Shown here one piece after another: positions 5,420 through 45,212 of a DNA stretch of 50,814 nucleotides. A program made the translations under genes and the position numbers. This stretch comes from Octopus bimaculoides (lineage: Eukaryota). The notes under the pieces are model-generated. The model worked only from the letters and a program-made list of their open reading frames with translations. It had not been told where the DNA came from and searched no databases. Within the stretch, counting starts at the first letter, position 1. Each line of letters opens with the position of its first letter. The stretch spans positions 25,536,166 through 25,586,979 of the forward strand of contig NC_068996.1 of the NCBI RefSeq assembly GCF_001194135.2. Reading direction: 5' to 3'.

Positions 5420-6200
5420 GTGTGCTGTTGACCTAGTTCTGTGAAATATTTGGAGAAGAAATTCCAGATGTTGAAGCAAAGCCTTGAACTGAAGGGTCTT
5501 AAAGTAAATTTATCCAAGTCTAAAGTTTTGTGAAGAAGTAAAAATGGCAGGACCGTGGTATTATCAGAGTAATGGCTCTGCATGGTATGCAGAAGAGGGG
5601 CTCACAGAAATACCATATAGTGTGCCTACATAAATAAATAAATAGATAGCTTCTGTTACATTCCAGGGAGAAAAACTAGAAGTAGTTGATAGCTTCTGTT
5701 ACCTAGGTGACCAAGTCAGTAACGGAGTGGGTGAGTGGATGGGAGGATGCTCTGAAAGTGTAGCTGCTAGAATAAGAATAGCCTTGGCAAAGTTCAGAGA
5801 GCTCTTACCTCTGCTGATGACAAAGGGCCTCTCTCTCAGAGTAAAAGGTAGACTTTATGACACATGTGTACAAACAGCCATGCTACATGGCAGTGAAATA
5901 TGGGCCGTGACTGCTGAGGAAATGCGTAAGCTTGCATGCAATGTAGCAAGTATGCTCCACTGGATGTGTAATGTCAGTGTGCATACACGACAGAGTGTAA
6001 GCACCCTGAAAGAAAAGTTGAACTTAAGAAGCATCAGATATGATGTGCAAGAGAGACGACTACGCTGGTATGGTCATGTGTTGCGAATGAATGAGGACAG
6101 TTGTATGAAAAAGTGTCACACCCAAGCAGTTGAGGGAACCTGTGGAAGAAGTAGACCCAGGAAGACCTGGGATGAAGTGGTGAAACATAACCTTCAAACA
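5420..6200 (+). pseudogene. RTE-clade LINE reverse transcriptase C-terminal region, decayed
   Basis: Translation gives FCYLGD, RIRIALAKFRELLPLL, MLHGSEIW, ERRLRWYGHVLRM and RSRPRKTWDEVV, typical of the RTE RT C-terminus. Stops and a deletion occur upstream. Confidence 0.9.
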
Positions 6201-6287
6201 TGGGTTGGACGGTTTGACTGAGGACTGGCGAACCGGATGGCTGCACCAGGCTTCAATCTGATCTGGCAGAGTTTCTATACAGGAAAA
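6198..6287 (-). mobile_element. Inverted fragment of the RTE 3' UTR
   Basis: catgggttggacggtttgactgaggactgg...gagtttcta matches 15560-15645 and 44138-44220. Confidence 0.8.
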
Positions 6288-7745: not shown

Positions 7746-7848
7746 TCATGAACTAAATTTTATTCAGAAATGTAATGAAATAAATTGTTAAAATGTTTTG
7801 TACATTATTTACATTTGACGGATATTTGTCCTCATCTTGTTTGTTGTT

Positions 7849-7891
7849 AACACGTTTCGGCTGATATACCCTCCAGCCTTCATCAGGTGTC
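7849..7891 (-). ncRNA. Type I hammerhead motif, left arm, lacking 3 nt at the cleavage site
   Basis: GACAC-CTGATGA-A-GGCTG-gagggtatat-CAGCC-GAAAC-GTGTT. Confidence 0.6.
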
Positions 7892-7974
7892 TTGGGGAAT
7901 TTTTGAACCTGGGTTCTCATTCCTAATGATGTTACTATTATTATATTATTATTATTATTACTATTATTAATCAG

Positions 7975-8048
7975 GTCGCTGCTGTAAATCGAACTCGGAA
8001 TCTTGGGGTTAGTAGCCCGCGCTCTTAACCACTACGCCATATGCCCGT
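7975..8048 (-). promoter_or_regulatory. tRNA-derived module with Pol III A box and near-B box inside the PLE 3' region
   Basis: A box TGGCGTAGTGG (8039-8029) and B box GTTCGATTT (7994-7986). The right-arm copy has a perfect GTTCGATTC at 9836-9844. Confidence 0.6.
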
Positions 8049-8075
8049 GGGCAATTATGGAGTGAATTTTAGGGC

Positions 8076-8444
8076 TTATAAATCTATTATTTTTCTATCC
8101 TTCCTCAATACTGGTTCCCATATGCTATTCATATCTGCACTCGGTCTGCTTAGGAGGTTGTTGTGTCCTAGCATATGTGCTGCTTCTTTTAGTTTTCATA
8201 TTTTCCAGTGTTGTTCCCTGTCTATTATTTTAACTTCATCCCACAGGGGGAGGTGGTCTCTATTATTCCATACATGATCAGCTATACCCAATTTATCAAT
8301 ATCTCCTCGTGTCACAGCTTTGTGATGTTCTTCTACCCTTATTTTGAGGGGGCGACATGTTTCGCCTTTGTATAACCTACCACAGCTGCATGGGATGGAG
8401 TACACGCAGTTTTTGGTCATATTCTCTTCTGTTGGTGGTTTTAC
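8076..8444 (-). pseudogene. PLE GIY-YIG endonuclease C-terminal half
   Basis: VKPPTEENMTKNCVYSIPCSCGRLYKGETCRPLKIRVEEH...IADHVW...WDEVKII. A premature TGA at 8196-8198 is followed in frame by KLKEAAHM...IIDL*. Confidence 0.9.
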
Positions 8445-8794: not shown

Positions 8795-9326
8795 TGGACG
8801 TATTAATAACACGCACCGAGTATGGATTCAGGACATCCGTATATCGCAAGCCAACCTTCACTGGATGATACCTTAACTTCAATTCACACCATCCATACAG
8901 TGTAAAGAGAGGAATTGCTTAGTACCTAAAACATTGAGTAAAGAATATAAGTAGCGATCGTGATACCCACCACGAAGAATGATCAAGCTCAGTAACAATC
9001 TATTAAGAAACAACTACCCCAAGAACATACTATCTACTCCAATTATGAAGAAAAGAGAAGATGAAACCAATAAACTGTCTACAGTCTGTCTACCCTATGT
9101 GAAAGGCCTCTCCGAAAAGATACAAAAGATATGCAGCCCATATGACATCAGGGCAGTATTCAAGAGCAATACAACACTTCGCAAATATCTCCTTCGGGTA
9201 AAACCACCAACAGAAGAGAATATGACCAAAAACTGCGTGTACTCCATCCCATGCAGCTGTGGTAGGTTATACAAAGGCGAAACATGTCGCCCCCTCAAAA
9301 TAAGGGTAGAAGAACATCGCAAAGCT
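8795..9326 (+). pseudogene. PLE RT C-terminus/thumb plus GIY-YIG N-terminus
   Basis: DVLITRTEYGFRTSVYRKPTFTG*YLNFNSHHP...NNYPKN...LPYVKGLSEKI...CVYSIPCSCGRLYKGET. Contains in-frame stops. Confidence 0.9.
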
Positions 9327-9938
9327 NNNNNNNNNNNNNNNNNNNNNNNNNNNNNNNNNNNNNNNNNNNNNNNNNNNNNNNNNNNNNNNNNNNNNNNNNN
9401 NNNNNNNNNNNNNNNNNNNNNNNNNNNNNNNNNNNNNNNNNNNNNNNNNNNNNNNNNNNNNNNNNNNNNNNNNNNNNNNNNNNNNNNNNNNNNNNNNNNN
9501 NNNNNNNNNNNNNNNNNNNNNNNNNNNNNNNNNNNNNNNNNNNNNNNNNNNNNNNNNNNNNNNNNNNNNNNNNNNNNNNNNNNNNNNNNNNNNNNNNNNN
9601 NNNNNNNNNNNNNNNNNNNNNNNNNNNNNNNNNNNNNNNNNNNNNNNNNNNNNNNNNNNNNNNNNNNNNNNNNNNNNNNNNNNNNNNNNNNNNNNNNNNN
9701 NNNNNNNNNNNNNNNNNNNNNNNNNNNNNNNNNNNNNNNNNNNNNNNNNNNNNNNNNNNNNNNNNNNNNNNNNNNNNNNNNNNNNNNNNNNNNNNNNNNN
9801 NNNNNGAGCGCGGGCTACTAACCCCAAGATTCCGAGTTCGATTCACAGCAGCGACCTGATTAATAATAGTAATAATAATAATAATATAATAATAGTAACA
9901 TCGTTAGGAATGAGAACCCAGGTTCAAAATTTCCCCAA

Positions 9939-9984
9939 GACACCTGACGAAGGCTGGAGGGTGTATCAGCCGAAACGTTGTGTT
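9939..9984 (+). ncRNA. Intact minimal type I hammerhead ribozyme motif in the PLE right arm
   Basis: GACAC-CTGACGA-A-GGCTG-gagggtgtat-CAGCC-GAAA-CGT-T-GTGTT. Palindromic ACGT stem III, predicted cleavage after 9979 (GUU). Confidence 0.8.
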
Positions 9985-10072
9985 AACAACAAACAAGATG
10001 AGGACAAATATCTGTCAAATGTAAATAATGTAAATAATGTAAATAATTCCTCATCTCTTAAATATAGAACTG

Positions 10073-10185
10073 TAAAATGTTTTGTGTATTGTAGAAGTAT
10101 AGCCAATTTATAGCACATAAGTTTTAACAACAAAATCTTATAATATTGATTCCACAAGACCCATATGGATCCTGGTTGAGAACCA
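10073..10185 (-). mobile_element. hAT/Charlie-like MITE end, the apparent PLE insertion target
   Basis: Ends in GGTTGAGAACCACTA, related to the CAGTGGTCCTCAACC terminus at 34809. Confidence 0.55.
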
Positions 10186-12240: not shown

Positions 12241-13481
12241 CAGGGCGCGATGGGTAAATTGTCGCCATTTCATATTTTTAACTTTGTGCATATGCATTGT
12301 TGTTCTTGATTTTGTTGACTACACAGTATAGTAGGGGCAGTTGAGCACCGTCTGTATGGAAAACAGCACCACGATGCAATTCACTCTGCCAGAAATTTGG
12401 AAATGACATGCTGTGCTGCTTAGAATTTGTGCTGGAAACTTCAATACAAATATTTCAGAGTGTTTGGGTGTCAATTTGAGGACATGTACTGAGTGTGATA
12501 AAAATCAAAGATCCAGTCAACATCATGGTGTTTGGAGTGATCACTAGTGATGGTGATGTTATGTCACTATTCATCTTCCCACACAACCTCAGACTCAATG
12601 CAGAAGTCTACATCAGTCTGAGTTTCTTAGCAGGCAGGTAGTGCATGAAGACATTTGGTATTCCTTATACAAGATGAAAAAGAGTCAATTTTTATCCTAA
12701 GCCATCAAGGACAAGAGAAAAGACTGTTACAAAGCTTTTGAACAAACTCAAGTATCCCCTCCAACTGAACATGCTTTGGTTTTTCTCAGATGAGAAAAAT
12801 TTCAGATGGTGAACATACAGAACAACTGTTGGCTTGCTGTGTCCCCAAAACATGTACTGAAAGTGATAAAAATCAAACAACCAGTCAAAATCATGGTGTT
12901 TGGAGTGATCACTAGTGATGGTGACGTTATGCCTCTATTCATCTTCCCACACGGCCTCAGACTCAACATGGAGGTTTACATCAAGTGCCTAGAGGAGGTA
13001 GTGCTGCCATGGATCAAGGGGCTGGCTGTTGGAAGATGCTATGTCTGGCAACAGGACTCTGCACCATGCCACACAAGCAGGAGAACCCAGTCATGGCTGA
13101 CAGACAAATTCTGTGACTACATCACCCCTAACATCTGGCCACCTAATTCCCCAGACTGGAACCCCCTTGATTAATATGTGTGGGGTGCAGTTGAGCGAGA
13201 AACCAACAAGACTCCTTGTAACACAAAAAATGAACTGAAGGCAAGGATTATTGCAGCATTCACCAATTTAAACAAGGAGACTGTCCTGAAGAGTTGCAGG
13301 AGATTCTGAAGTCGTCTGGAGACCATGGTTGAAGCCAATGGCGATTTTATTGAATAAATTTACTCTTTAGCATTTCAAGATATTTTTATGTAGTTTTGGT
13401 AAATATGTCTGTTAAAATGAGATGTTAGTGTTATTTTCCCTTTTGAATAATTTAGACAATACTATTTTCACTGCACCCCAG
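12241..13481 (+). mobile_element. Tc1/mariner DD37D (maT-type) transposon remnant, internally rearranged
   Basis: TA-flanked ends CAGGGCGCGATGGGTAAATTGTC and a degenerate TGCACCCCAG. Transposase has FSDEKNF, MVFGVITSDG and WQQD-37aa-PLD*YVWG. Confidence 0.85.
12660..13356 (+). pseudogene. DD37D transposase catalytic domain, with frameshifts and stops
   Basis: ORF 12806..13174 continues past the stop as YVWGAVERETNK...ELKARIIAAF...VEANGDFIE*. Confidence 0.85.
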
Positions 13482-14789: not shown

Positions 14790-16990
14790 CTGTCTATTGA
14801 TGTGATATTAAACCTTTCTTAGATCCTAAAAGAAGACTTGTTCAGTCTGATCTTGAAAGAGCCTTCCATTTGCCATATCACTGTATACCTACATTGTCCT
14901 ACCATGGTTCTTCAATACTATTCCCACCTCATATTTGATGGTTTCTGAGTTACATTGCTACTTTTAGTGGGCATGTGGCATTACCTCTGAAAGTGTAGCC
15001 TGCATTAATTTTGAGTCTATTAACTTAAATTTGTTTCATATTGGGTGTTCAGCAAAAGGAAACTCTTGAGGTGTGCTTTTCAACATCTTCCTACATTTAT
15101 GTGCTAGAGGAAAATGTTTGTTGGGTAATCTAAAAAACAAGTATAACTTATTCAAATCATGACCATTAGTAACCAGGACAGTATTGTAGTAATAATGGAC
15201 TGACACATCAATGATATTTAGAAGGAGGTCTTTAGTCTGTCTTTCTCATTTGCTTCACAACTTGCTTGGATTCTTGAAAAGTAGGCTTCATGTTCATCTG
15301 CAGCTGAGGCGGATGATTTGGAATATTTCTCAGGAAGTCCTCAGCTGTGTTCAAGATTCTATTTAGACGGGTGGTGGAAAAATGTTTCTTCCAGCATAGG
15401 AGTATGTCCCATGGATCAGTTAGGATGTTTGTATTGTCAGCTATAAGAAGGGATCCAGTTTATGTTCATACTGGTTCAAATAGTTGTTTCATTCTAGCAT
15501 AGAAATTTATGAGTTCACATGCATCTGTCGTCGTCGTTTAAAGTCCGCTTTCCATGCTAGCATGGGTTGGAAGATTTGACTGAGGACTGGTGAAACCAGA
15601 TGGCTACACCAGGCTCCAATCTGATTTGGCAGAGTTTCTACAGCTGGATGCCCTTCCTAACGCCAACCACTCAGAGAGTGTAATGGGTGCTTTTACGTGT
15701 CACCCGCACGAAGGCCAGTCAGGCGGTACTGGCAACGGCGACGCTCAAAATGGTGCATTTCATGTGCCACCCGTACAAAAAAAAAAAAAAAGCCCTGAAA
15801 TTCAACTACTTTTTGTTGTCACCAAATGTTCTGTAGTTCTCTTAGTTTTTTTGACACTCCTGTTTTAGTTTCTGAAAATACTTCTTTTTGAGTATGGATC
15901 TTTGGTTTGTTCATGAGCCTGTTGAGCATGTTTTCTTTCCTCAATCAGGTTGATTGATTTCAAAAGTTTTCATCACACCAGTCCTGATTTTTGATCTTGG
16001 TGAAGCTGATGACAGTGTTTGGCATTTCTGCAACTCTTCATTCTTCATCAATAGACCAGTCATTAACTAGATTAGGACTAAGTTCCTGACTTATTTTGGC
16101 TTCAAAAGTGGTTGCAGTGTCAGAGTTCTGGAGTTTAGAAATGTCATATGATATGGTGGTTGCTGTTGCATTCTTGGTTTTTTACATAAGGAAATGCTTT
16201 TACATGTGGTAGCATTAATACTAGCAGTCATCAGCATAATGGCCCAATTCAGTGACAAGGACATCTCTTTTGTTGTGTTGCTGTATGATGGCATTGTCTA
16301 TCATTAGATGTGATTTCTGAGCCAGATAATGGTAGCAACTTCCAATGTTTAGACCACTTTTTCTAGGACCTTCTTCAATTGAGGTGGGCAGCAATATTTC
16401 TAGACAGGCCTGCCCAGATACAAATGCAGGACTGGACTCTTAATTGTCTTTAGATCTAAGTAGGGTGACCTCCAATGTGCAGGTTTAGGATGAGAATCTT
16501 CCAGTTTCACCAAAATCTGCTCTTGTCATCCATTCTCTATCATGGGCTTTGCAAAAGTTGGTTGATGATAAAAAAAAATCAGAATAGAAGAAAGTGATGA
16601 TGACTTGAATTTGTTTAAGGTGGACCTCAACTTGCCAGGAAGTGACCCACACACTTGGTTCCATGACCTTTGTCTGTAACACATATTGAATGAGATATGC
16701 AGGATGCAGTTTTAAAACTGCAATGGATTGCTGCTGCTCTGGTTATAGTTCTGAGTGGTGCCTTCTGTAGCTTACCAGTCATACATAGCCCTCTTCATAT
16801 ACTGGTTCAACCACTGAGATCGGTTGCAATCATTATCCATTTGTTCCATGATAGGGGTCTTCAGGGGTTGGTTGCACTTAGTCTAGATCCTTGTCTTCGA
16901 CCTTGCCACCAAGGGTGGCCTTTCAAGTGACTTAGGACTCTCGATAGAAGTGCTTTCAGAATCATGCAAGCCCCTCCATTATGACCAGGA
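14790..16990 (-). mobile_element. Highly decayed RTE/BovB-like LINE (5' UTR, endonuclease, linker, internally deleted RT, C-terminus)
   Basis: Minus translation NFYARMKQLF...NILTDPWDILLCWKKHF...NIPNHPP...PTFQE, LRELQNIW*QQK and GSKKGLISHQ match RTE ORF motifs. Confidence 0.7.
15525..15778 (-). mobile_element. RTE 3' UTR copy nested in the older LINE
   Basis: Close match to 25500-25733 and 42340-42565. Confidence 0.85.
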
Positions 16991-20555: not shown

Positions 20556-21115
20556 GCATATGTTAATTGAAGTTTTTTCAACTCACTGTATATATATATA
20601 TATGTGTGTAATGCACTACTGTGTATGTGTGTGTGTGCATCTTTCTCTCTCTCTTTCTCTCTATCTTTCTCTCTCTCTCTCTATCTCTTGCTCTCTCTCT
20701 CTCTATCTCTTGCTCTCTCTCTCTCTATCTCTTGCTCTCTCTCTCTCTATCTCTTGCTCTCTCTCTATCTCTTGCTCTCTCTCTAAATATATATATGTAT
20801 ATATATATATACACACACACATATATATACACATATATATATGTATACATATGCATACACACATATATATACACATATTCATACGTACACACATACACAC
20901 ACAGACACACACACAAATATACGAAGGTAGATAGATGGATAAATAGATATATCTAGATAGGTATACATATATATTTGTAAGTGTGTGTGTGTGTGTATAT
21001 GTGTGTGTGATTGTGTGTGTACATGTGTGTGTGTGTGTGTGTGTTTTATACATACTTACATACACACAACAAAGACATTCACATGCAGTATGCAGCAGAG
21101 CATCACATATGTCTG

Positions 21116-21177
<62 letters not shown>

Positions 21178-21217
21178 GAGAGAGTGAGAAAGAGAGAATA
21201 TATTTGTATTTCTATCA

Positions 21218-21264
<47 letters not shown>

Positions 21265-22198: not shown

Positions 22199-22783
22199 TA
22201 TATGTATCTNNNNNNNNNNNNNNNNNNNNNNNNNNNNNNNNNNNNNNNNNNNNNNNNNNNNNNNNNNNNNNNNNNNNNNNNNNNNNNNNNNNNNNNNNNN
22301 NNNNNNNNNNNNNNNNNNNNNNNNNNNNNNNNNNNNNNNNNNNNNNNNNNNNNNNNNNNNNNNNNNNNNNNNNNNNNNNNNNNNNNNNNNNNNNNNNNNN
22401 NNNNNNNNNNNNNNNNNNNNNNNNNNNNNNNNNNNNNNNNNNNNNNNNNNNNNNNNNNNNNNNNNNNNNNNNNNNNNNNNNNNNNNNNNNNNNNNNNNNN
22501 NNNNNNNNNNNNNNNNNNNNNNNNNNNNNNNNNNNNNNNNNNNNNNNNNNNNNNNNNNNNNNNNNNNNNNNNNNNNNNNNNNNNNNNNNNNNNNNNNNNN
22601 NNNNNNNNNNNNNNNNNNNNNNNNNNNNNNNNNNNNNNNNNNNNNNNNNNNNNNNNNNNNNNNNNNNNNNNNNNNNNNNNNNNNNNNNNNNNNNNNNNNN
22701 NNNNNNNNNNNNNNNNNNNNNNNNNNNNNNNNNNNNNNNNNNNNNNNNNNNNNNNNNNNNNNNNNNNNNNNNNNNNNNNNNNN

Positions 22784-22815
<32 letters not shown>

Positions 22816-23191
22816 CTCGTTCAGAGATTTAACATTGCTTGTTTTCACTTTTTCGAGATCAGTGAATAATTTCACTGGAAAAAGATATATGTATTTGCAT
22901 CGGGAAATCTTTCGCATTGAAGGTCGGTGATTGTCGTACGCTGAGGACGAGTAAATACCCAGAAACTCGAGTCCGTATGTATCGCAGATCAAGATGGGAA
23001 GGATGACTTCCCTTTGCAAATACAGACAGGACACAGATGTGTGTCAATAGCCAGCTGGAGGAGATGTTCTCCTGGGGCTAAAAGCAATAGTAACATCCAC
23101 CCTTAGGGGGCAGCCACATTTAAGTGGCAAATATACTTCACCTTGTCGTGCAGTTACTGTTAATACCTCGTTCAGAGATTTAACATTGCTT
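22816..23191 (+). mobile_element. Non-coding hammerhead-containing unit, 351-nt period, with 25-nt terminal direct repeats (retrozyme-like)
   Basis: CTCGTTCAGAGATTTAACATTGCTT at 22816-22840 and 23167-23191, (TA)n on both flanks, several hairpins and an internal hammerhead motif. Confidence 0.6.
22935..22979 (+). ncRNA. Type I hammerhead motif with palindromic stem III and imperfect stem II
   Basis: CGTACG-CTGAGGA-cgagtaaataccca-GAAA-CTCGAG-T-C-CGTATG: 6-bp stem I, ACTCGAGT palindrome, GUC site at 22971-22973. Confidence 0.7.
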
Positions 23192-23429
23192 ATATATATA
23201 TATGTAACATAATGTACAACTTCCCTTTCAATCATGTCTAACCTAGTACCAGAATGCATCATACTTTCACTAATTGTTTTCAGTGTTTATGTACATATGA
23301 GCAAACACATATAACCCCTCTCAGTCACCACTCCCCCACACCACCACCACCACCACCACCACTGCCTTTTGATCCAGCAGAACATCCAGGATTTGACTTG
23401 TGAATAAAAGGAGAGTGAAAAGGAGGGCA

Positions 23430-23570
23430 GGAACAGTAGTGAAAGGCAGGATGAAAAGCAAAATTGGTGCTGATGATTTGAACCCAGAACACACAGAACT
23501 GGAACAAATATCACAATGCATTCCGTCAAATGCTATACCAATTCTGTTGAAGTGCATTGAAACTAACATG
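23430..23570 (-). mobile_element. Degenerate copy of the SINE seen at 46662-46894
   Basis: Minus strand gggttcaaatc...ttttgcttttcatcctgcc resembles gagttcaaattcc...ctttgcctttcatccttt. Confidence 0.55.
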
Positions 23571-24249
23571 TCTGAAATGTTGGCTGCTTTACTTGTCATG
23601 CAGAATCAGCTCATCCTCTACCCCACCCCTCACACCACCATCTTTTCCTCCTCCTCCTCCTCCTGTAATTTTATGCCCTTATTTATAGGGAACAGCTTTT
23701 CTCTTATGTCTGTTTCACTAATTACATGACTATATTCAAAGTTTTATCTCTTTTATTTTAGATTTTTCAAAGTTTCTTATTAGCTTTCTACAATTGGATT
23801 GGAATAATAGACTTCCTAAATCCATATCTGAGGTTTCTAGATCTTGACAGTCTCATTTTCAAAAATGTGTTGAATACATTTGGCATCTCTGTTGTTTCTT
23901 ATATACTGAACAAATTCATGTAAACTTTTTCACCAAACGTTTCTTTGAAACTGTTAACATTATGCTCCAATCGTCACTCTTTGATTTGTTTGTTATAGTC
24001 AATACATACATAAATGATTGCATGCATGCATCAATCCATCCATCCATTCATACATGCATATAAATGGAACAGACAAGAGAAGAGAGGTGAAAGAATAGAT
24101 GTTTATTCCATTTGTTTACAGCTGTTTCATAACCTTGTTATATAATAGATATTACACCAACATTTGCACATATAAGTGTACTGAGAAGTAAACTAACAGA
24201 CTAGCATTATGAATGATATATTGAATCCCTATTATTACTATGTATGTAT

Positions 24250-24910
24250 ATATATATATAAAAACAAATAGTAAATGAGTATATGCATATATACGTACAG
24301 GTATGTGCATACCGACATCCACCTGTATGTATAGGTGCATATCTGGGTACAGGACATTGCAAACAAACGTAGACGAGAACACACAAGCCACATAGAGAAC
24401 ATTCTCCTTCATCAGCCACCCACGTTTTAACACCGGCGTTTCGACGAGCTTGGGCAGGACGCATCGCTAAAACGGCTCGTCCCATGGATCGCAGATTAAA
24501 TTTGTATACGCAAATTAAATCTAGCCATGGAGGAATGTAGTGGCGGACAAAAAACAAGACAGGAAAACAAACAGAAAAGGCNNNNNNNNNNNGACCCGAG
24601 AGGGACAAAGTGGTGCGTGCGTTGCTTGGCGAAAGCCAAGGAAGGAAAGGATTATTGACCGGAAGCATGTGACCATGCCGGTGTAAAGGGAAGAGAGAGA
24701 AACAGAGGGAGGAAGTAGAAGAATAGGTGAGCAACGAGAGGAAAAGAGAAAGAGAGGAAAAACGAGGGGGAAAAAGAGATACGTAGTAGTAACAGAGGAA
24801 GAACGAGAGGGGTAAAGCGAGATACGTAGTAGTACAGAGGAAGAACGAGGGGGGGAAGGAAAGAGAAAGAGATAGAGTAGCGTCGGAGGATATGAGTTAC
24901 GAAAACTACT
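24250..24910 (-). repeat. Dispersed repeat family A, longest copy, with pyrimidine-rich upstream segment
   Basis: Matches 135-347 and 13560-13835, and extends across a 12-N gap into a CT-rich segment on the minus strand. Confidence 0.65.
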
Positions 24911-25179: not shown

Positions 25180-25733
25180 GCTCATTGAATGTGAAAATTT
25201 GTTTTCGAGACCTTTGGAAATATGAAGTTCGTGAGAAGACCCAGCAAGCCAAATGAGACCATAACCCATGGACTATGCCAGGGGTGTAGCCAGTCCACTT
25301 ATGCGTACCTTTCCTTCATTGGACACTAAACTCTGCTTGCGAAGACCTGTTGAAGCAAGTGAAATGGAAATGAAATTAAATTTGACAACTGGCACCCATG
25401 ATCGTTGCCAGAGCAGCTGACTGGCTTTCATGCTGGTGGAATGTGAAAAAACATTCGAGCAAGGTCGTTGCCAGTGTCGCTGGACTGGCACGTAAAAAAC
25501 ACCTTTTTGAGCGTAGCCGTTGCCAGTACCGCCTGACTGGCCTTCGTGCGGGTGACACGTAAAAGCACCCACTACACTCTCTGAGTGGTTGGCGTTAGGA
25601 AGGGCATCCAGCTGTAGAAACTCTGCCAAATCAGATTGGAGCCTAGTATAGCTATCTGGTTCACCAGTCCTCAGTCAAATCGTCCAACCCATGCTAGCAT
25701 GGAAAGCAGGCGTTAAACGATGATGATGATGAT
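25180..25733 (+). mobile_element. RTE LINE 3' UTR, near complete, with (GAT)n tail
   Basis: Collinear with the 3' UTR following the RTE ORF at 44095-44860 (reverse complement). Confidence 0.85.
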
Positions 25734-29714: not shown

Positions 29715-30670
29715 TGTTGGAATTGTCAAGCACCAAGTTAGACTTGATGTACTACGTCTGTGATCAAAGACGTTCCAGCTGTGACTATTACACCTTTTAT
29801 TCAGCTGTAGTATATCTAATAGAAAAGGTGCATGGCTCAGTGGTTAGAGTGTTGGGCTCACAATCATGAGGTTGCGAGTATGATTCCCAAACCGAGCTGC
29901 GTGTTGTGTTCTTGAGCAAAACACTTTATTTCATGTTGCTCCAGTTCATTGAACTGTAGAAATGAGTTGTGATGTCTCTAATGCCAAGCTGTTTTGGCCT
30001 TTGCCTTTCCCTTGGATAACATTAGTGGCATGGAGAGGGGATACTGGTATGCATGGGCAACTGCTGATCTTCCATAAACAACCTTGCCTGGACTTGTGTC
30101 TCAGAGGAGAACTTTCTAGATGCAATCCCATGATTATTTGTGACTGAAGGTTTTTTTTTAGTATATCTAGGACTATAACTGTATAATAAATACTTCCTTA
30201 TTGTTGTTTAGCACCAAGTCAGACTTGATCCAGCAGACTTATGATTAGACATTCCAGCTGTGATCATCCCATCTTTTATTCAGCTGTAGTGTAACTAGTG
30301 TCATCTTATCTAATGAGTCTTTTGTTGTTGTTGTGGTGGTTCTTGATATTGTTTAGTCCAGGTCAAACTTGATCCAACAGACCAATAATTAAAGAATGTT
30401 CCAGCCATGACCATCACATATTTTATTCAGATGTCATTTATCCAGAACCGTATTATCTTTCCTTGTTGCTGTTGTATTATTTGACCCCATATAGACCTGT
30501 TCCAGAAGACTAAGGATCAAAGGTGTTCTAGCTGTAACTATTTCATCTTTTAATTTAGACATAGTGTACCTACAACTAATATATTCCCTTGTTACTGTTG
30601 CTATCATTTAACCCTATGCAATCCCGATTCTGTAGACCAAGGATCAATGATGTTCTAGGTATGACAAGGT
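29715..30670 (-). repeat. Head-to-tail array of about 5 diverged 120-140-bp family B units, interrupted by a SINE
   Basis: Recurring (ttg)n...gacttgatc...atcaaag..gttccagc..tgac.atc...ttttattcag at about 29715, 30200, 30320, 30460 and 30590. Confidence 0.7.
29825..30150 (+). mobile_element. tRNA-derived SINE (family 3-related head)
   Basis: TGGCTCAGTGGTTAG A box and gtgttgtgttcttgagcaaaacactttatttc. Confidence 0.75.
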
Positions 30671-39129: not shown

Positions 39130-39325
39130 ATGACTGAGATCACAACACCTCACCTGGATGGGACACCAGTCCATTGCAGGATTACTCATATTTGCCAGCT
39201 GAATGGACTGAAGCAACGTGAAATGAAGTGTTTTGCTCAAGAACACAATGCGTCGCCCGGTCTAGGAGTTAAATCCACAGTTACCCAGTTGTGAGTGCAA
39301 CATCCTAAGCACTAAGTCTGCATCA
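39130..39325 (-). mobile_element. SINE family 3-related 5' half
   Basis: gaaatgaagtgttttgctcaagaacacaat is the reverse complement of the gtgttcttgagcaaaacacttt box. Confidence 0.7.
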
Positions 39326-39423
39326 CACACACACACACACACACACACAGAGTCTAAAACATACATATATATATATATATATATCCCTTAGTGGGCTGTA
39401 CCCCCAACCCCTAACTCTCTCAC

Positions 39424-39479
<56 letters not shown>

Positions 39480-39700
39480 AAGACTCATAAAGCAAGTTAC
39501 CTAGTTTCCATAGTGTATATATGATCGAGATCACAATACTGCCCCTGAATGGGATGCTAGTCCATTGCAGGATTACTCATATAACAATGTGAAATGAAGT
39601 GTTTTACTCTAGAACACACCACACCTCACAGTTCAGGAATCGAAACACCAATCTTGAAATCATAAGTGCAACACACTAAATATTAGACCACATTTCTTCA
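39480..39700 (-). mobile_element. SINE family 3-related 5' half, second copy
   Basis: Aligns with 39130-39325. Confidence 0.65.
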
Positions 39701-44094: not shown

Positions 44095-45212
44095 CATCAT
44101 CATCATCATCGCTTAATGTTTGCTTTCCATGCTAGCATGGGTTGGACGGTTTGATTGGGGACTGGTGAGCCAGATGGCTGCACCAGGCTCCAATCTGATC
44201 TGGCAGAGTTTCTACAGCTGGATGCCCTTCCTAACGCCAACCACTCCGAGAGTGTACTGGGTGCTTTTACGTGCCACCGGCACGAAGTTCAGTCAGGTGG
44301 TGCTGGCAACGGCCATGCTCACATAATGTTTTTTAAGTGCCACCTGCACAGGAGCCAGTCCAGCAGCACTGGCAACAACCTTGCTCGAATGTTTTTTCAC
44401 GTGCCACCAGCACGGAAGCCAGACCGCAGGTGCTCTGGCAACGATCACGCTTGGACGGTGCTCTTAGTGATCTACTGGTACAGGTGCCATCACGATTTCG
44501 CTTTTGCTTGCCCCAACAGGTCTTCACAAGCCGAGTTTAGTGTTTAATGATGAGACGTTGGCATGGGTGCCAGTCTACAAATTTAGTTCGATTTTGATTT
44601 CACTTGCCTCAACAGGTCTTTGCAAGCTGAGTGTAGTGTTCAATGAAGAGACGTTGGCATGGGAGCCAGTGTACAAATTTAGTTCGATTTCGATTTCACT
44701 TACTTCAACAGGTCTTCGCAAGCATAGTTCAGTGTCCAATGAAGGAATGTCACGCATAAGTGGGCTGGCTACATCCCTCGCAGAGGCCTTGGATTTTGGT
44801 CTCACTTGGCTTGCCGGATCTTCTCAAGTACAGCATATTTCCAAAGGTCTCGGTCTCAAGTCATTGCCTCGGTGAGGCCTAAAGTTCGGAGGTCGTGCTT
44901 CATCACCTCATCCCAGGTCTTCCTGGGTCTGCCTCTTCCACAGGTTCCCTCAACTGCTAGGGTGTGGTACTTTTTCACACAGCTATCCTCATCCATTATC
45001 GCCACATGTCCATACCAGCACAATCGTCTCTCTTGCACACCACAACTGATGCTTCTTATGTTCAGCTTTTCTCTCAAGATACTTACACTCTGTCTAGTAT
45101 GCACACTGACATTACTCATCCATCGTAGCATACTGGCTTCATTCCTTGTGAGCTTATGCATGTCCTCAGCAGTCATGGCCCATGTTTCACTGCCATGTAG
45201 CATGACTGTTCG
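44095..45212 (-). mobile_element. RTE LINE 3' end: RT C-terminus, ~750-bp 3' UTR and (GAT)n tail
   Basis: RTVMLHGSETWAMTAEDM...ERRLCWYGHVAIM...GRGRPRKTWDEVMKHDL, same family as 5420-6200. Truncated by a gap. Confidence 0.9.

What the first reader, a model, noticed from the sequence alone, without database searches (positions are those of the whole stretch)
22816..23191. Retrozyme-like unit: 351-nt hammerhead RNA module with 25-nt terminal repeats, inserted in (TA)n
Seen: an exact 25-nt direct repeat at both ends (period 351 nt) that is unrelated to the (TA)n flanks, so it is not a duplication of the flanking target. The unit has no meaningful ORF. It carries a type I hammerhead (6-bp stem I, CUGAGGA, GAAA, palindromic stem III ACUCGAGU, GUC site) and a run of hairpins at 22860-22877, 22996-23012, 23030-23045, 23059-23073 and 23113-23128. 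Established: minimal type I hammerheads with palindromic stem III work as dimers in Penelope-like elements and in non-LTR retrozymes, which yield small circular RNAs of a few hundred nt. Inference: this is a slightly-more-than-unit-length insertion reverse-transcribed from a circular RNA, i.e. a candidate cephalopod retrozyme family. Stem II (cgagtaaataccca) is imperfect, so this copy may be decayed from something like TGGGTaaatACCCA.
Basis: partly seen in the sequence, partly recalled or inferred. Interest (0 to 1): 0.85.

Follow-up and report, generated by a model that had tools for sequence, protein, structure and literature searches.

The report
Solo hammerhead retroelement copy in octopus DNA
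A 351-base non-coding insert in a (TA)n microsatellite of an octopus-like genome looks like a single, probably dead copy of a known kind of small mobile element that carries a self-cutting hammerhead RNA motif; whether it belongs to a multi-copy or active family could not be tested here.

Summary
There is an exact 25-nt direct repeat at 22816-22840 and 23167-23191 (period 351). (TA)n lies on both sides and the unit has no meaningful ORF. A type I hammerhead-like motif lies at 22935-22979, with every conserved core base, a 6-bp stem I, a palindromic stem III and a GUC site.

Two new findings support a real hammerhead element. Stem I continues into a 41-bp interrupted helix. The unit RNA folds far better than shuffles (z -5.8). 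The genome is octopod-like and carries Penelope-like elements (PLEs).

Several results count against a working ribozyme or a proven family:
- Stem II does not pair (0 kcal/mol), and the G10.1-C11.1 pair is missing.
- No Rfam hammerhead model matches.
- The locus has 1.07 units and one ribozyme, so it cannot release a unit-length RNA.
- No second copy was found in any sequence I could reach, and no octopod genome could be searched as DNA.

Best reading: a solo, degenerate copy of a PLE-type non-autonomous hammerhead element (a metazoan non-LTR "retrozyme" relative). It was copied from a template longer than one unit. That template could be a circle or a multimeric transcript; the data cannot tell which.

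This is a new member of a known kind, of modest interest.

The parts
22784..22815 (.). Left flank of the insertion: (AT)14.5 followed by AAT. It directly follows the assembly gap 22210-22783.
22816..22840 (+). Terminal direct repeat, copy 1 (CTCGTTCAGAGATTTAACATTGCTT)
   Evidence: family D4, 100% identity
22816..23166 (+). One 351-nt unit: non-coding, 42.7% GC. The predicted RNA is 62% paired, with MFE -116.6 kcal/mol and z -5.83.
22890..22940 (+). 5' arm of a 41-bp interrupted helix (15+11+9+6 bp). Its last 6 bp (22935-22940) form the 5' strand of hammerhead stem I.
   Evidence: the 146-nt arm alone has z -5.58; inverted repeat I2
22941..22947 (+). Hammerhead core C3-A9 (CUGAGGA)
22948..22961 (+). 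Stem II region CGAGUAAAUACCCA. It does not pair outward from the core (C-A and A-C mismatches) and folds at 0.0 kcal/mol. Its CGAGU pairs instead with ACUCG of stem III in the MFE fold.
22962..22973 (+). G12 A13 A14, the palindromic stem III ACUCGAGU (22965-22972) and C17. The predicted cleavage site lies between 22973 and 22974.
   Evidence: an 8-bp intermolecular stem III forms in the cofold of two copies
22974..23024 (+). 3' arm of the 41-bp helix. Its first 6 nt (CGUAUG) form the 3' strand of stem I.
23030..23128 (+). Run of local hairpins: 23030-23045, 23057-23072 and 23113-23128
23167..23191 (+). Terminal direct repeat, copy 2. This is the first 25 nt of a second unit or, alternatively, a target-site duplication.
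23192..23204 (.). Right flank: ATATATATATATG, the rest of the (TA)n target

Best explanation
This is a solo copy (1.07 units) of a small non-autonomous retroelement carrying a type I, dimer-type hammerhead ribozyme. It belongs to the class that includes Penelope-like-element (PLE) pseudo-LTR hammerheads and metazoan non-LTR retrozymes.

Inferred mechanism. A source locus with at least two units is transcribed. Paired hammerheads, sharing an 8-bp intermolecular stem III, cut out unit-length RNA, which can be ligated into a circle. A PLE reverse transcriptase/GIY-YIG endonuclease supplied in trans nicks AT-rich DNA, here a (TA)n tract. It then copies a template longer than one unit, either a circle or an uncut multimer. 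That leaves one full unit plus 25 nt of the next.

Shown here: the terminal redundancy, the (TA)n flanks, the hammerhead core with stems I and III, the very stable fold with stem I extended into a long helix, the lack of coding capacity, and PLEs in the same genome.

Inferred: the RNA template, the PLE helper and the existence of a family.

This copy is probably dead. It has one ribozyme only, and its stem II is disrupted by two transition-type mismatches.
For: - Exact 25-nt terminal repeat with period 351. Only the 25 nt are duplicated, and (TA)n lies on both sides, so the simplest pre-insertion site is one continuous microsatellite.
- All conserved hammerhead core positions are present, with a 6-bp stem I, a palindromic stem III and C17. 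Chance expectation is 0.007 per window. None of 30 chance core matches in metagenomes had a stem I above 4 bp.
- Stem I continues into a 41-bp helix with the core at its tip.
- The unit folds at z -5.83. Twenty-four background segments average -0.57, and only a microsatellite segment falls below -4.
- Size 351 nt, GC 42.7% and no ORF homologues. These match published metazoan retrozymes: about 300-bp monomers (220-400 nt in the species studied), low GC and highly self-paired (PMC7229834, PMC7761336).
- PLE RT/GIY-YIG fragments lie at 8079-8444 and 8797-9326 in the same window, and about 500 relatives are in the protein database.
- Literature: PLEs and relatives favour AT-rich or (TA)n targets and make partial tandems and tails (PMC8557442, PMC11167929). 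Retrozymes are PLE derivatives and include dispersed monomer (solo) copies (bioRxiv 10.64898/2026.07.22.740005).
Against: - Stem II does not form and the conserved G10.1-C11.1 pair is absent.
- No Rfam hammerhead model matches, even at E<=10.
- There is one copy only in the window.
- No relative was found in 40 kb of octopod/cephalopod-like PLE loci, in 5.8 billion predicted proteins searched with all six frames, in JGI metagenomes or in IMG/VR.
- The window's own PLE shows no hammerhead and no similarity to the unit.
- There are no expression or cleavage data.
Confidence: 0.55

Rival explanations
1. Same class of element, but the 25-nt repeat is a target-site duplication. A 326-nt element (22841-23166) was copied from a linear RNA and inserted into a 25-nt unique island lying between two (TA)n runs.
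For: - The 326-nt core folds just as well without the repeat (z -6.06), so the 25 nt are not needed for the structure.
- Metazoan retrozyme repeats are reported to have target duplications longer than the 4 bp seen in plants (PMC7229834).
Against: - It needs a contrived target: a complex 25-mer embedded in a microsatellite. The redundancy model needs only a plain (TA)n.
- PLE-type insertions typically show partial tandems, and target duplications in microsatellites are usually not discernible (PMC8557442).
Confidence: 0.15
2. The locus is really a tandem array (n.07 units) that the short-read assembler collapsed to one unit. The true locus would then be a proper multimeric retrozyme array with two or more ribozymes.
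For: - The window has 10 gaps of irregular size, typical of short-read scaffolding. One of them, 574 N, ends 32 nt before the unit.
- Near-identical 351-bp tandem units are a classic case of assembly collapse (general knowledge).
- Published retrozymes are mostly tandem (PMC7229834).
Against: Nothing in the sequence shows it. Both junctions with (TA)n are assembled, and the gap is separated from the unit by 32 nt of microsatellite. No read data are available.
Confidence: 0.15
3. The hammerhead resemblance is fortuitous. The unit is an unrelated structured repeat or an unknown non-autonomous element.
For: - Stem II fails, Rfam gives no hit, and there is a single copy.
- At 0.007 per 47 kb, a genome of gigabase size would hold hundreds of such look-alikes if stem II is not required (extrapolated).
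Against: - The motif sits exactly at the tip of a 41-bp helix that supplies stem I.
- It lies inside a repeat-bounded insert in (TA)n. Joint chance is below about 1e-3 per window.
- Both stem II mismatches are C-A/A-C, each one transition away from a pair (direct reading).
Confidence: 0.12
4. It is a solo pseudo-LTR or a heavily 5'-truncated copy of an autonomous PLE, rather than a dedicated non-autonomous element.
For: - PLE hammerheads lie in pseudo-LTRs, and most occur genome-wide as single motifs from truncated PLEs (PMC4209133).
- PLEs are present in this genome.
Against: - There is no PLE coding similarity in the unit or in the 1.4 kb downstream.
- There is no nucleotide similarity to the window's PLE or to two related PLE loci, and none of these showed a hammerhead.
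- The unit closes on itself with period 351, which a truncated 3' end would not do.
Confidence: 0.1

Closest known systems
Metazoan non-LTR retrozymes (Cervera & de la Pena 2020, PMC7229834; Li, Clavereau & Pollet 2026, bioRxiv 10.64898/2026.07.22.740005)
   Same: - Non-coding unit of a few hundred nt (351), with low GC (42.7%).
- Type I hammerhead with a weak or palindromic helix III that requires a dimer.
- Highly self-paired predicted RNA.
- Co-occurrence with PLEs.
- Dispersed monomer copies are described.
   Different: - The assembly shows no tandem array: 1.07 units and one ribozyme.
- Stem II is unpaired.
- Family, copy number and circular RNA were not demonstrated.
- No cephalopod example appears in the papers I could search.
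Minimal hammerheads of Penelope-like elements (Cervera & de la Pena 2014, PMC4209133)
   Same: - Type I topology with a palindromic 15.2-16.2/helix III, implying action as a dimer.
- Mostly found as single dispersed motifs.
- The host genome carries PLEs.
   Different: - PLE minimal hammerheads have a long helix II (6-8 bp), a conserved G10.1-C11.1 pair, an extra nucleotide after A9 and a short helix I (4-5 bp).
- Here helix II is broken and helix I is 6 bp, extended to 41 bp.
- The motif is not next to a PLE ORF at this locus.
PLE insertion architecture: pseudo-LTR partial tandems and 30-40-bp tail (Craig et al. 2021, PMC8557442; Frangieh et al. 2024, PMC11167929)
   Same: - Slightly more than one unit, with a short terminal redundancy (25 nt).
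- Insertion into AT-rich or (TA)n DNA.
   Different: - The tail is defined from many copies of a family, some with it and some without. Only one copy is available here.
- No RT start site or helper element has been identified.
Newt/salamander satellite 2 and Schistosoma Sm-alpha hammerhead repeats (stated from my own knowledge and as cited in PMC7229834)
   Same: Genomic repeats of a few hundred nt with type I hammerheads that act as dimers.
   Different: Those are high-copy families with active ribozymes. Here there is one degenerate copy.

Membership tests
Hammerhead ribozyme, type I | Conserved core: C3 U4 G5 A6 N7 G8 A9, G12 A13 A14, A15.1-U16.1, H17 | tested here: met
   CUGAGGA at 22941-22947, GAA at 22962-22964, A15.1 at 22965, U16.1 at 22972, C17 at 22973
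Hammerhead ribozyme, type I | Stem I formed by the two open ends | tested here: met
   6 bp (22935-22940 with 22974-22979), extended to a 41-bp interrupted helix
Hammerhead ribozyme, type I | Stem II hairpin closed by a 10.1-11.1 pair (usually G-C) | tested here: not met
   0 bp outward from the core. There are C-A and A-C mismatches, and the region folds at 0.0 kcal/mol.
Hammerhead ribozyme, type I | Stem III (here the palindromic, dimer-forming variant) | tested here: met
   ACUCGAGU is self-complementary, and an 8-bp intermolecular helix forms in the cofold of two copies.
Hammerhead ribozyme, type I | Match to a curated covariance model (Rfam hammerhead families) | tested here: not met
   No hit at the gathering score on the window, and none at E<=10 on 22784-23300
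Hammerhead ribozyme, type I | Self-cleavage at H17 | not testable with these tools
   Needs in vitro transcription of monomer and dimer constructs
PLE minimal hammerhead (PMC4209133) | Palindromic positions 15.2-16.2 / loop 3 | tested here: met
   CUCGAG at 22966-22971
PLE minimal hammerhead (PMC4209133) | Long helix II (6-8 bp), G10.1-C11.1, and an extra nucleotide between A9 and 10.1 | tested here: not met
   Treating C22948 as the extra nucleotide gives a G-C pair, but only if A22961 is also bulged out. Even then only 3 of 4 positions pair (direct reading).
PLE minimal hammerhead (PMC4209133) | Located in the pseudo-LTR next to a PLE RT/EN ORF | tested here: not met
   No PLE protein similarity in 22784-24581. 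The nearest PLE coding stretch is at 8797-9326. Upstream is an assembly gap.
Metazoan non-LTR retrozyme | Non-coding unit of a few hundred nt with GC below 50% | tested here: met
   351 nt, 42.7% GC, and no homologues of any reading frame
Metazoan non-LTR retrozyme | Tandem repeat with at least two consecutive units, each with a complete hammerhead | tested here: not met
   1.07 units and one motif in the assembly. Assembly collapse cannot be excluded.
Metazoan non-LTR retrozyme | Multi-copy family in the genome | not testable with these tools
   No octopod genome can be searched as DNA here. Single copy in the window. Nothing in 40 kb of PLE loci, the protein databases, JGI metagenomes or IMG/VR.
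Metazoan non-LTR retrozyme | Stable, highly self-paired predicted RNA | tested here: met
   MFE -116.6 kcal/mol, z -5.83, 62% paired. Background mean z is -0.57.
Metazoan non-LTR retrozyme | Expressed as unit-length linear and circular RNA joined at the cleavage site | not testable with these tools
   Needs RNA-seq or northern data
Metazoan non-LTR retrozyme | Co-occurrence with PLEs in the host genome | tested here: met
   PLE RT/GIY-YIG fragments in the window, and 506 relatives at E<=1e-5, including Octopus sinensis

The most novel reading that the evidence does not exclude
This locus is a fossil of a live octopod retrozyme family. Tandem source loci elsewhere in the genome would make about 351-nt circular RNAs through dimeric hammerheads. 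A PLE enzyme would spread them into (TA)n microsatellites, with the 25-nt overhang marking two alternative reverse-transcription start sites (a retrozyme counterpart of the PLE tail). It would be the first cephalopod retrozyme family and a direct structural link between retrozyme insertions and the PLE internal-initiation mechanism.
Probability: 0.2. Interest if true: 0.5.

Novelty: new member of a known kind. Interest (0 to 1): 0.35.

Why it matters
If the family is real, retrozyme/PLE hammerhead elements extend to cephalopods. Cephalopod genomes are repeat-rich, and none of the retrozyme papers I could search mentions them.

The locus would also be a clean single-insertion example: (TA)n target and 25-nt terminal redundancy. 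That bears on how these elements are copied, whether from a circular template or from a multimeric template with the internal initiation shown for a PLE enzyme in vitro.

As it stands, it is one degenerate copy of a kind of element already described in corals, mussels, insects, fish and amphibians. Its value is as a seed sequence for a genome-wide search.

Tried and rejected
1. Rfam at the gathering score on the whole window, and at E<=10 on 22784-23300: no ribozyme family on either strand. The same search on the window's PLE region found nothing.
2. BLASTN of the unit against the window: only the self match and the 25-mer.
3. Fishing for other copies through spurious ORFs. The 116-aa circular ORF, then a concatenation of the other five frames, were searched against 5.8 billion predicted proteins: nothing.
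4. Exact look-up of four ORFs within 5 kb of the unit, to fetch the same locus from other assemblies for an empty-site test: none on record.
5. Two loci fetched through PLE proteins: an ENA assembly contig and Octopus sinensis chromosome CM016859.1, 20 kb each. Neither holds a copy of the unit or a hammerhead, although many other window repeats match the O. sinensis locus at 75-90%.
6. Exact 23-mer of the ribozyme in JGI metagenomes and IMG/VR: 0 hits.
7. Degenerate core pattern in metagenomes: 30 hits, all chance, with no stems and no flank similarity.
8. tRNA-derived SINE idea: ARAGORN finds nothing.
9. Truncated PLE idea: no blastx similarity.
10. Folding with and without the 25-mer, to tell a target duplication from redundancy: both fold equally well, so the test is uninformative.
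11. Other direct repeats of 18-24 nt in the window (for example 39168/39559 and 29794/30273) turned out to be SINE-like copies unrelated to this unit.
13. The single search of protein representatives was not used, because its hits could not be traced back to DNA.

Full report
**The sequence**

An exact 25-mer, CTCGTTCAGAGATTTAACATTGCTT, occurs at 22816-22840 and again at 23167-23191, 351 nt apart. Nothing else is duplicated. To the left lie (AT)14.5 and AAT, to the right ATATATATATATG, and the interior is unique within the window.

The left microsatellite starts right after a 574-N assembly gap (22210-22783). This is one of ten gaps of irregular size in the window. The assembly is therefore a short-read scaffold, and the locus may be incompletely represented.

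**The hammerhead-like motif**

A descriptor scan of both strands finds one hammerhead-like site in the window, at 22935-22979 on the + strand. Its parts are:
- CGUACG (5' strand of stem I)
- CUGAGGA
- CGAGUAAAUACCCA (stem II region)
- GAAA
- the palindrome ACUCGAGU
- C17
- CGUAUG (3' strand of stem I)

Every conserved core position is present, and the topology is type I.

A motif this good (stem I >=6 bp, stem III >=4 bp, stem II unconstrained) is expected 0.007 times per simulated window. As an empirical control, the 19 fixed core bases occur 30 times in JGI metagenomes. None of those sites has a stem I above 4 bp or any flank similarity.

Complex exact direct repeats enclose about 11% of the window. 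The chance that such a motif falls inside a repeat-bounded segment is therefore below about 1e-3.

**What is wrong with the ribozyme**

- Stem II does not pair outward from the core: C10.1 faces A11.1 and A10.3 faces C11.3.
- The 14-mer folds at 0.0 kcal/mol.
- In the monomer, its CGAGU pairs instead with ACUCG of stem III.
- In a cofold of two copies, stems I and III (8 bp, intermolecular) form, but stem II does not.
- An alternative register is possible, with C22948 as the extra nucleotide typical of PLE hammerheads. It restores a G-C closing pair only if A22961 is also bulged, and one A-C mismatch remains.
- No Rfam hammerhead model matches, even at E<=10 on a 517-nt search.

Both mismatches are one transition away from a pair.

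**New evidence for a real structured RNA element**

I permuted the 351-nt unit at the predicted cleavage site (22973/22974). It folds at -116.6 kcal/mol, against -87.2 +/- 5.0 for dinucleotide shuffles (z -5.83). The minus strand gives z -5.19.

Twenty-four other 351-nt segments of the window average z -0.57. Only one, made of complementary microsatellites, is below -4.

The fold places stem I at the inner end of a 41-bp interrupted helix, 22890-22940 with 22974-23024. The catalytic core sits at its tip. That 146-nt arm alone has z -5.58.

Published retrozyme circular RNAs are likewise predicted to be stable and highly self-paired (PMC7761336). Given such a hairpin, finding CUGANGA at one side of its loop and GAAA-palindrome-UH at the other by chance is negligible (my estimate, about 1e-8).

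The unit is 42.7% GC. Its longest circular ORF is 116 aa, and no reading frame has any relative among 5.8 billion predicted proteins.

**Context**

The window comes from an octopod-like genome.
- Two inverted, decayed PLE copies lie at 7796-8444 (-) and 8795-10074 (+). They encode the end of the reverse transcriptase and a GIY-YIG endonuclease.
- A composite of these fragments finds 506 relatives. The only named one is Octopus sinensis LOC118763458, at 77% identity.
- Window repeats match an O. sinensis chromosome at 75-90%.
- This PLE has no hammerhead that I could detect and no similarity to the unit.
- Neither the unit nor the 1.4 kb downstream of it has PLE coding similarity.

At this locus, then, the unit is not the tail of a PLE ORF. 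The gap upstream leaves a small doubt.

**How it probably arose**

Published work supplies the frame:
- Metazoan type I hammerheads lie in PLE pseudo-LTRs and in short non-coding tandem repeats called non-LTR retrozymes. The repeats are cut by dimeric hammerheads, circularised, and thought to be copied into cDNAs longer than one unit (PMC4209133, PMC7229834, PMC7761336).
- A 2026 preprint derives retrozymes from PLE pseudo-LTRs and describes dispersed monomer copies.
- A purified PLE enzyme cuts AT-rich DNA and starts reverse transcription at internal sites of a multimeric transcript. That explains the partial tandems and the 30-40-bp tail (PMC11167929).
- (TA)n is a preferred target of some PLE clades (PMC8557442).

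One unit plus 25 nt sitting in (TA)n fits this picture.

The data do not show that the template was a circle. An uncut multimer copied by a PLE enzyme gives the same product. A 25-bp target duplication is less parsimonious but is not excluded, and folding with or without the 25-mer cannot decide between them.

**What could not be tested**

All need the host genome or transcriptome, and none is searchable as DNA with these tools. Indirect routes all came back empty. This is weak negative evidence only. The reachable octopod sequence amounted to about 20 kb plus the window.

**Verdict**

The locus is best read as a solo, degenerate copy of a PLE-type non-autonomous hammerhead element. It works like a retrozyme relative. 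It fails two membership tests for an active retrozyme, namely at least two tandem ribozymes and an intact stem II. It also fails one for a canonical hammerhead, the stem II and covariance-model match.

It is a new member of a known kind, of modest interest, and useful as a seed for a genome-wide search.

Noticed in passing
window 7796-8444 (-) and 8795-10074 (+): Two inverted copies of a decayed Penelope-like element, split by assembly gaps. They encode the RT C-terminus and a GIY-YIG endonuclease, and the + copy has stops and a frameshift. Identity to Octopus sinensis LOC118763458 is 77% aa. No hammerhead was detected in the 3' region.
   Followed up: partly
window 29794-30290 and 39168-39600: A SINE-like insert (29812-30165) lies between 18-nt direct repeats at 29794 and 30273, with pol III box-like motifs by eye. 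A related fragment is at 39196-39267, and a 24-nt repeat pair is at 39168/39559. ARAGORN calls no tRNA.
   Followed up: partly
window 12806-13174 (+): A 122-aa ORF resembling the C-terminal DDE part of a Tc1/mariner transposase (Pfam DDE_3, weak, E 0.0076).
   Followed up: partly
window 5727-6221 (+) and 44856-45212 (-): Two related ORFs (…MLHGSE.WA.TAE.M.KL…RRL.WYGHV…) that look like the C-terminal end of a LINE reverse transcriptase. Pfam gave no hit, so the identification rests on memory only.
   Followed up: no
window 15590-15868 (+), 25273-25629 (-), 44155-44547 (+): Three copies of an interspersed repeat whose ORFs share …FLQLDALPNANHSESV.GAFTCHPHEGQSGGTGNG…. The family was not identified.
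   Followed up: no
window 44493-44744: A 96-nt tandem repeat, 2.6 copies at 85% identity, next to the repeat family above.
   Followed up: no
window 20901-21251: This segment folds at z -13. The cause appears to be the (GT)n/(TG)n and other simple repeats listed there by Tandem Repeats Finder, not a structured RNA. It shows that fold z-scores in this microsatellite-rich genome need a complexity check.
   Followed up: no
whole window: Ten assembly gaps of irregular length (10-764 N) and more than 100 microsatellite arrays. This is a short-read scaffold, in which near-identical tandem units would tend to be collapsed.
   Followed up: no
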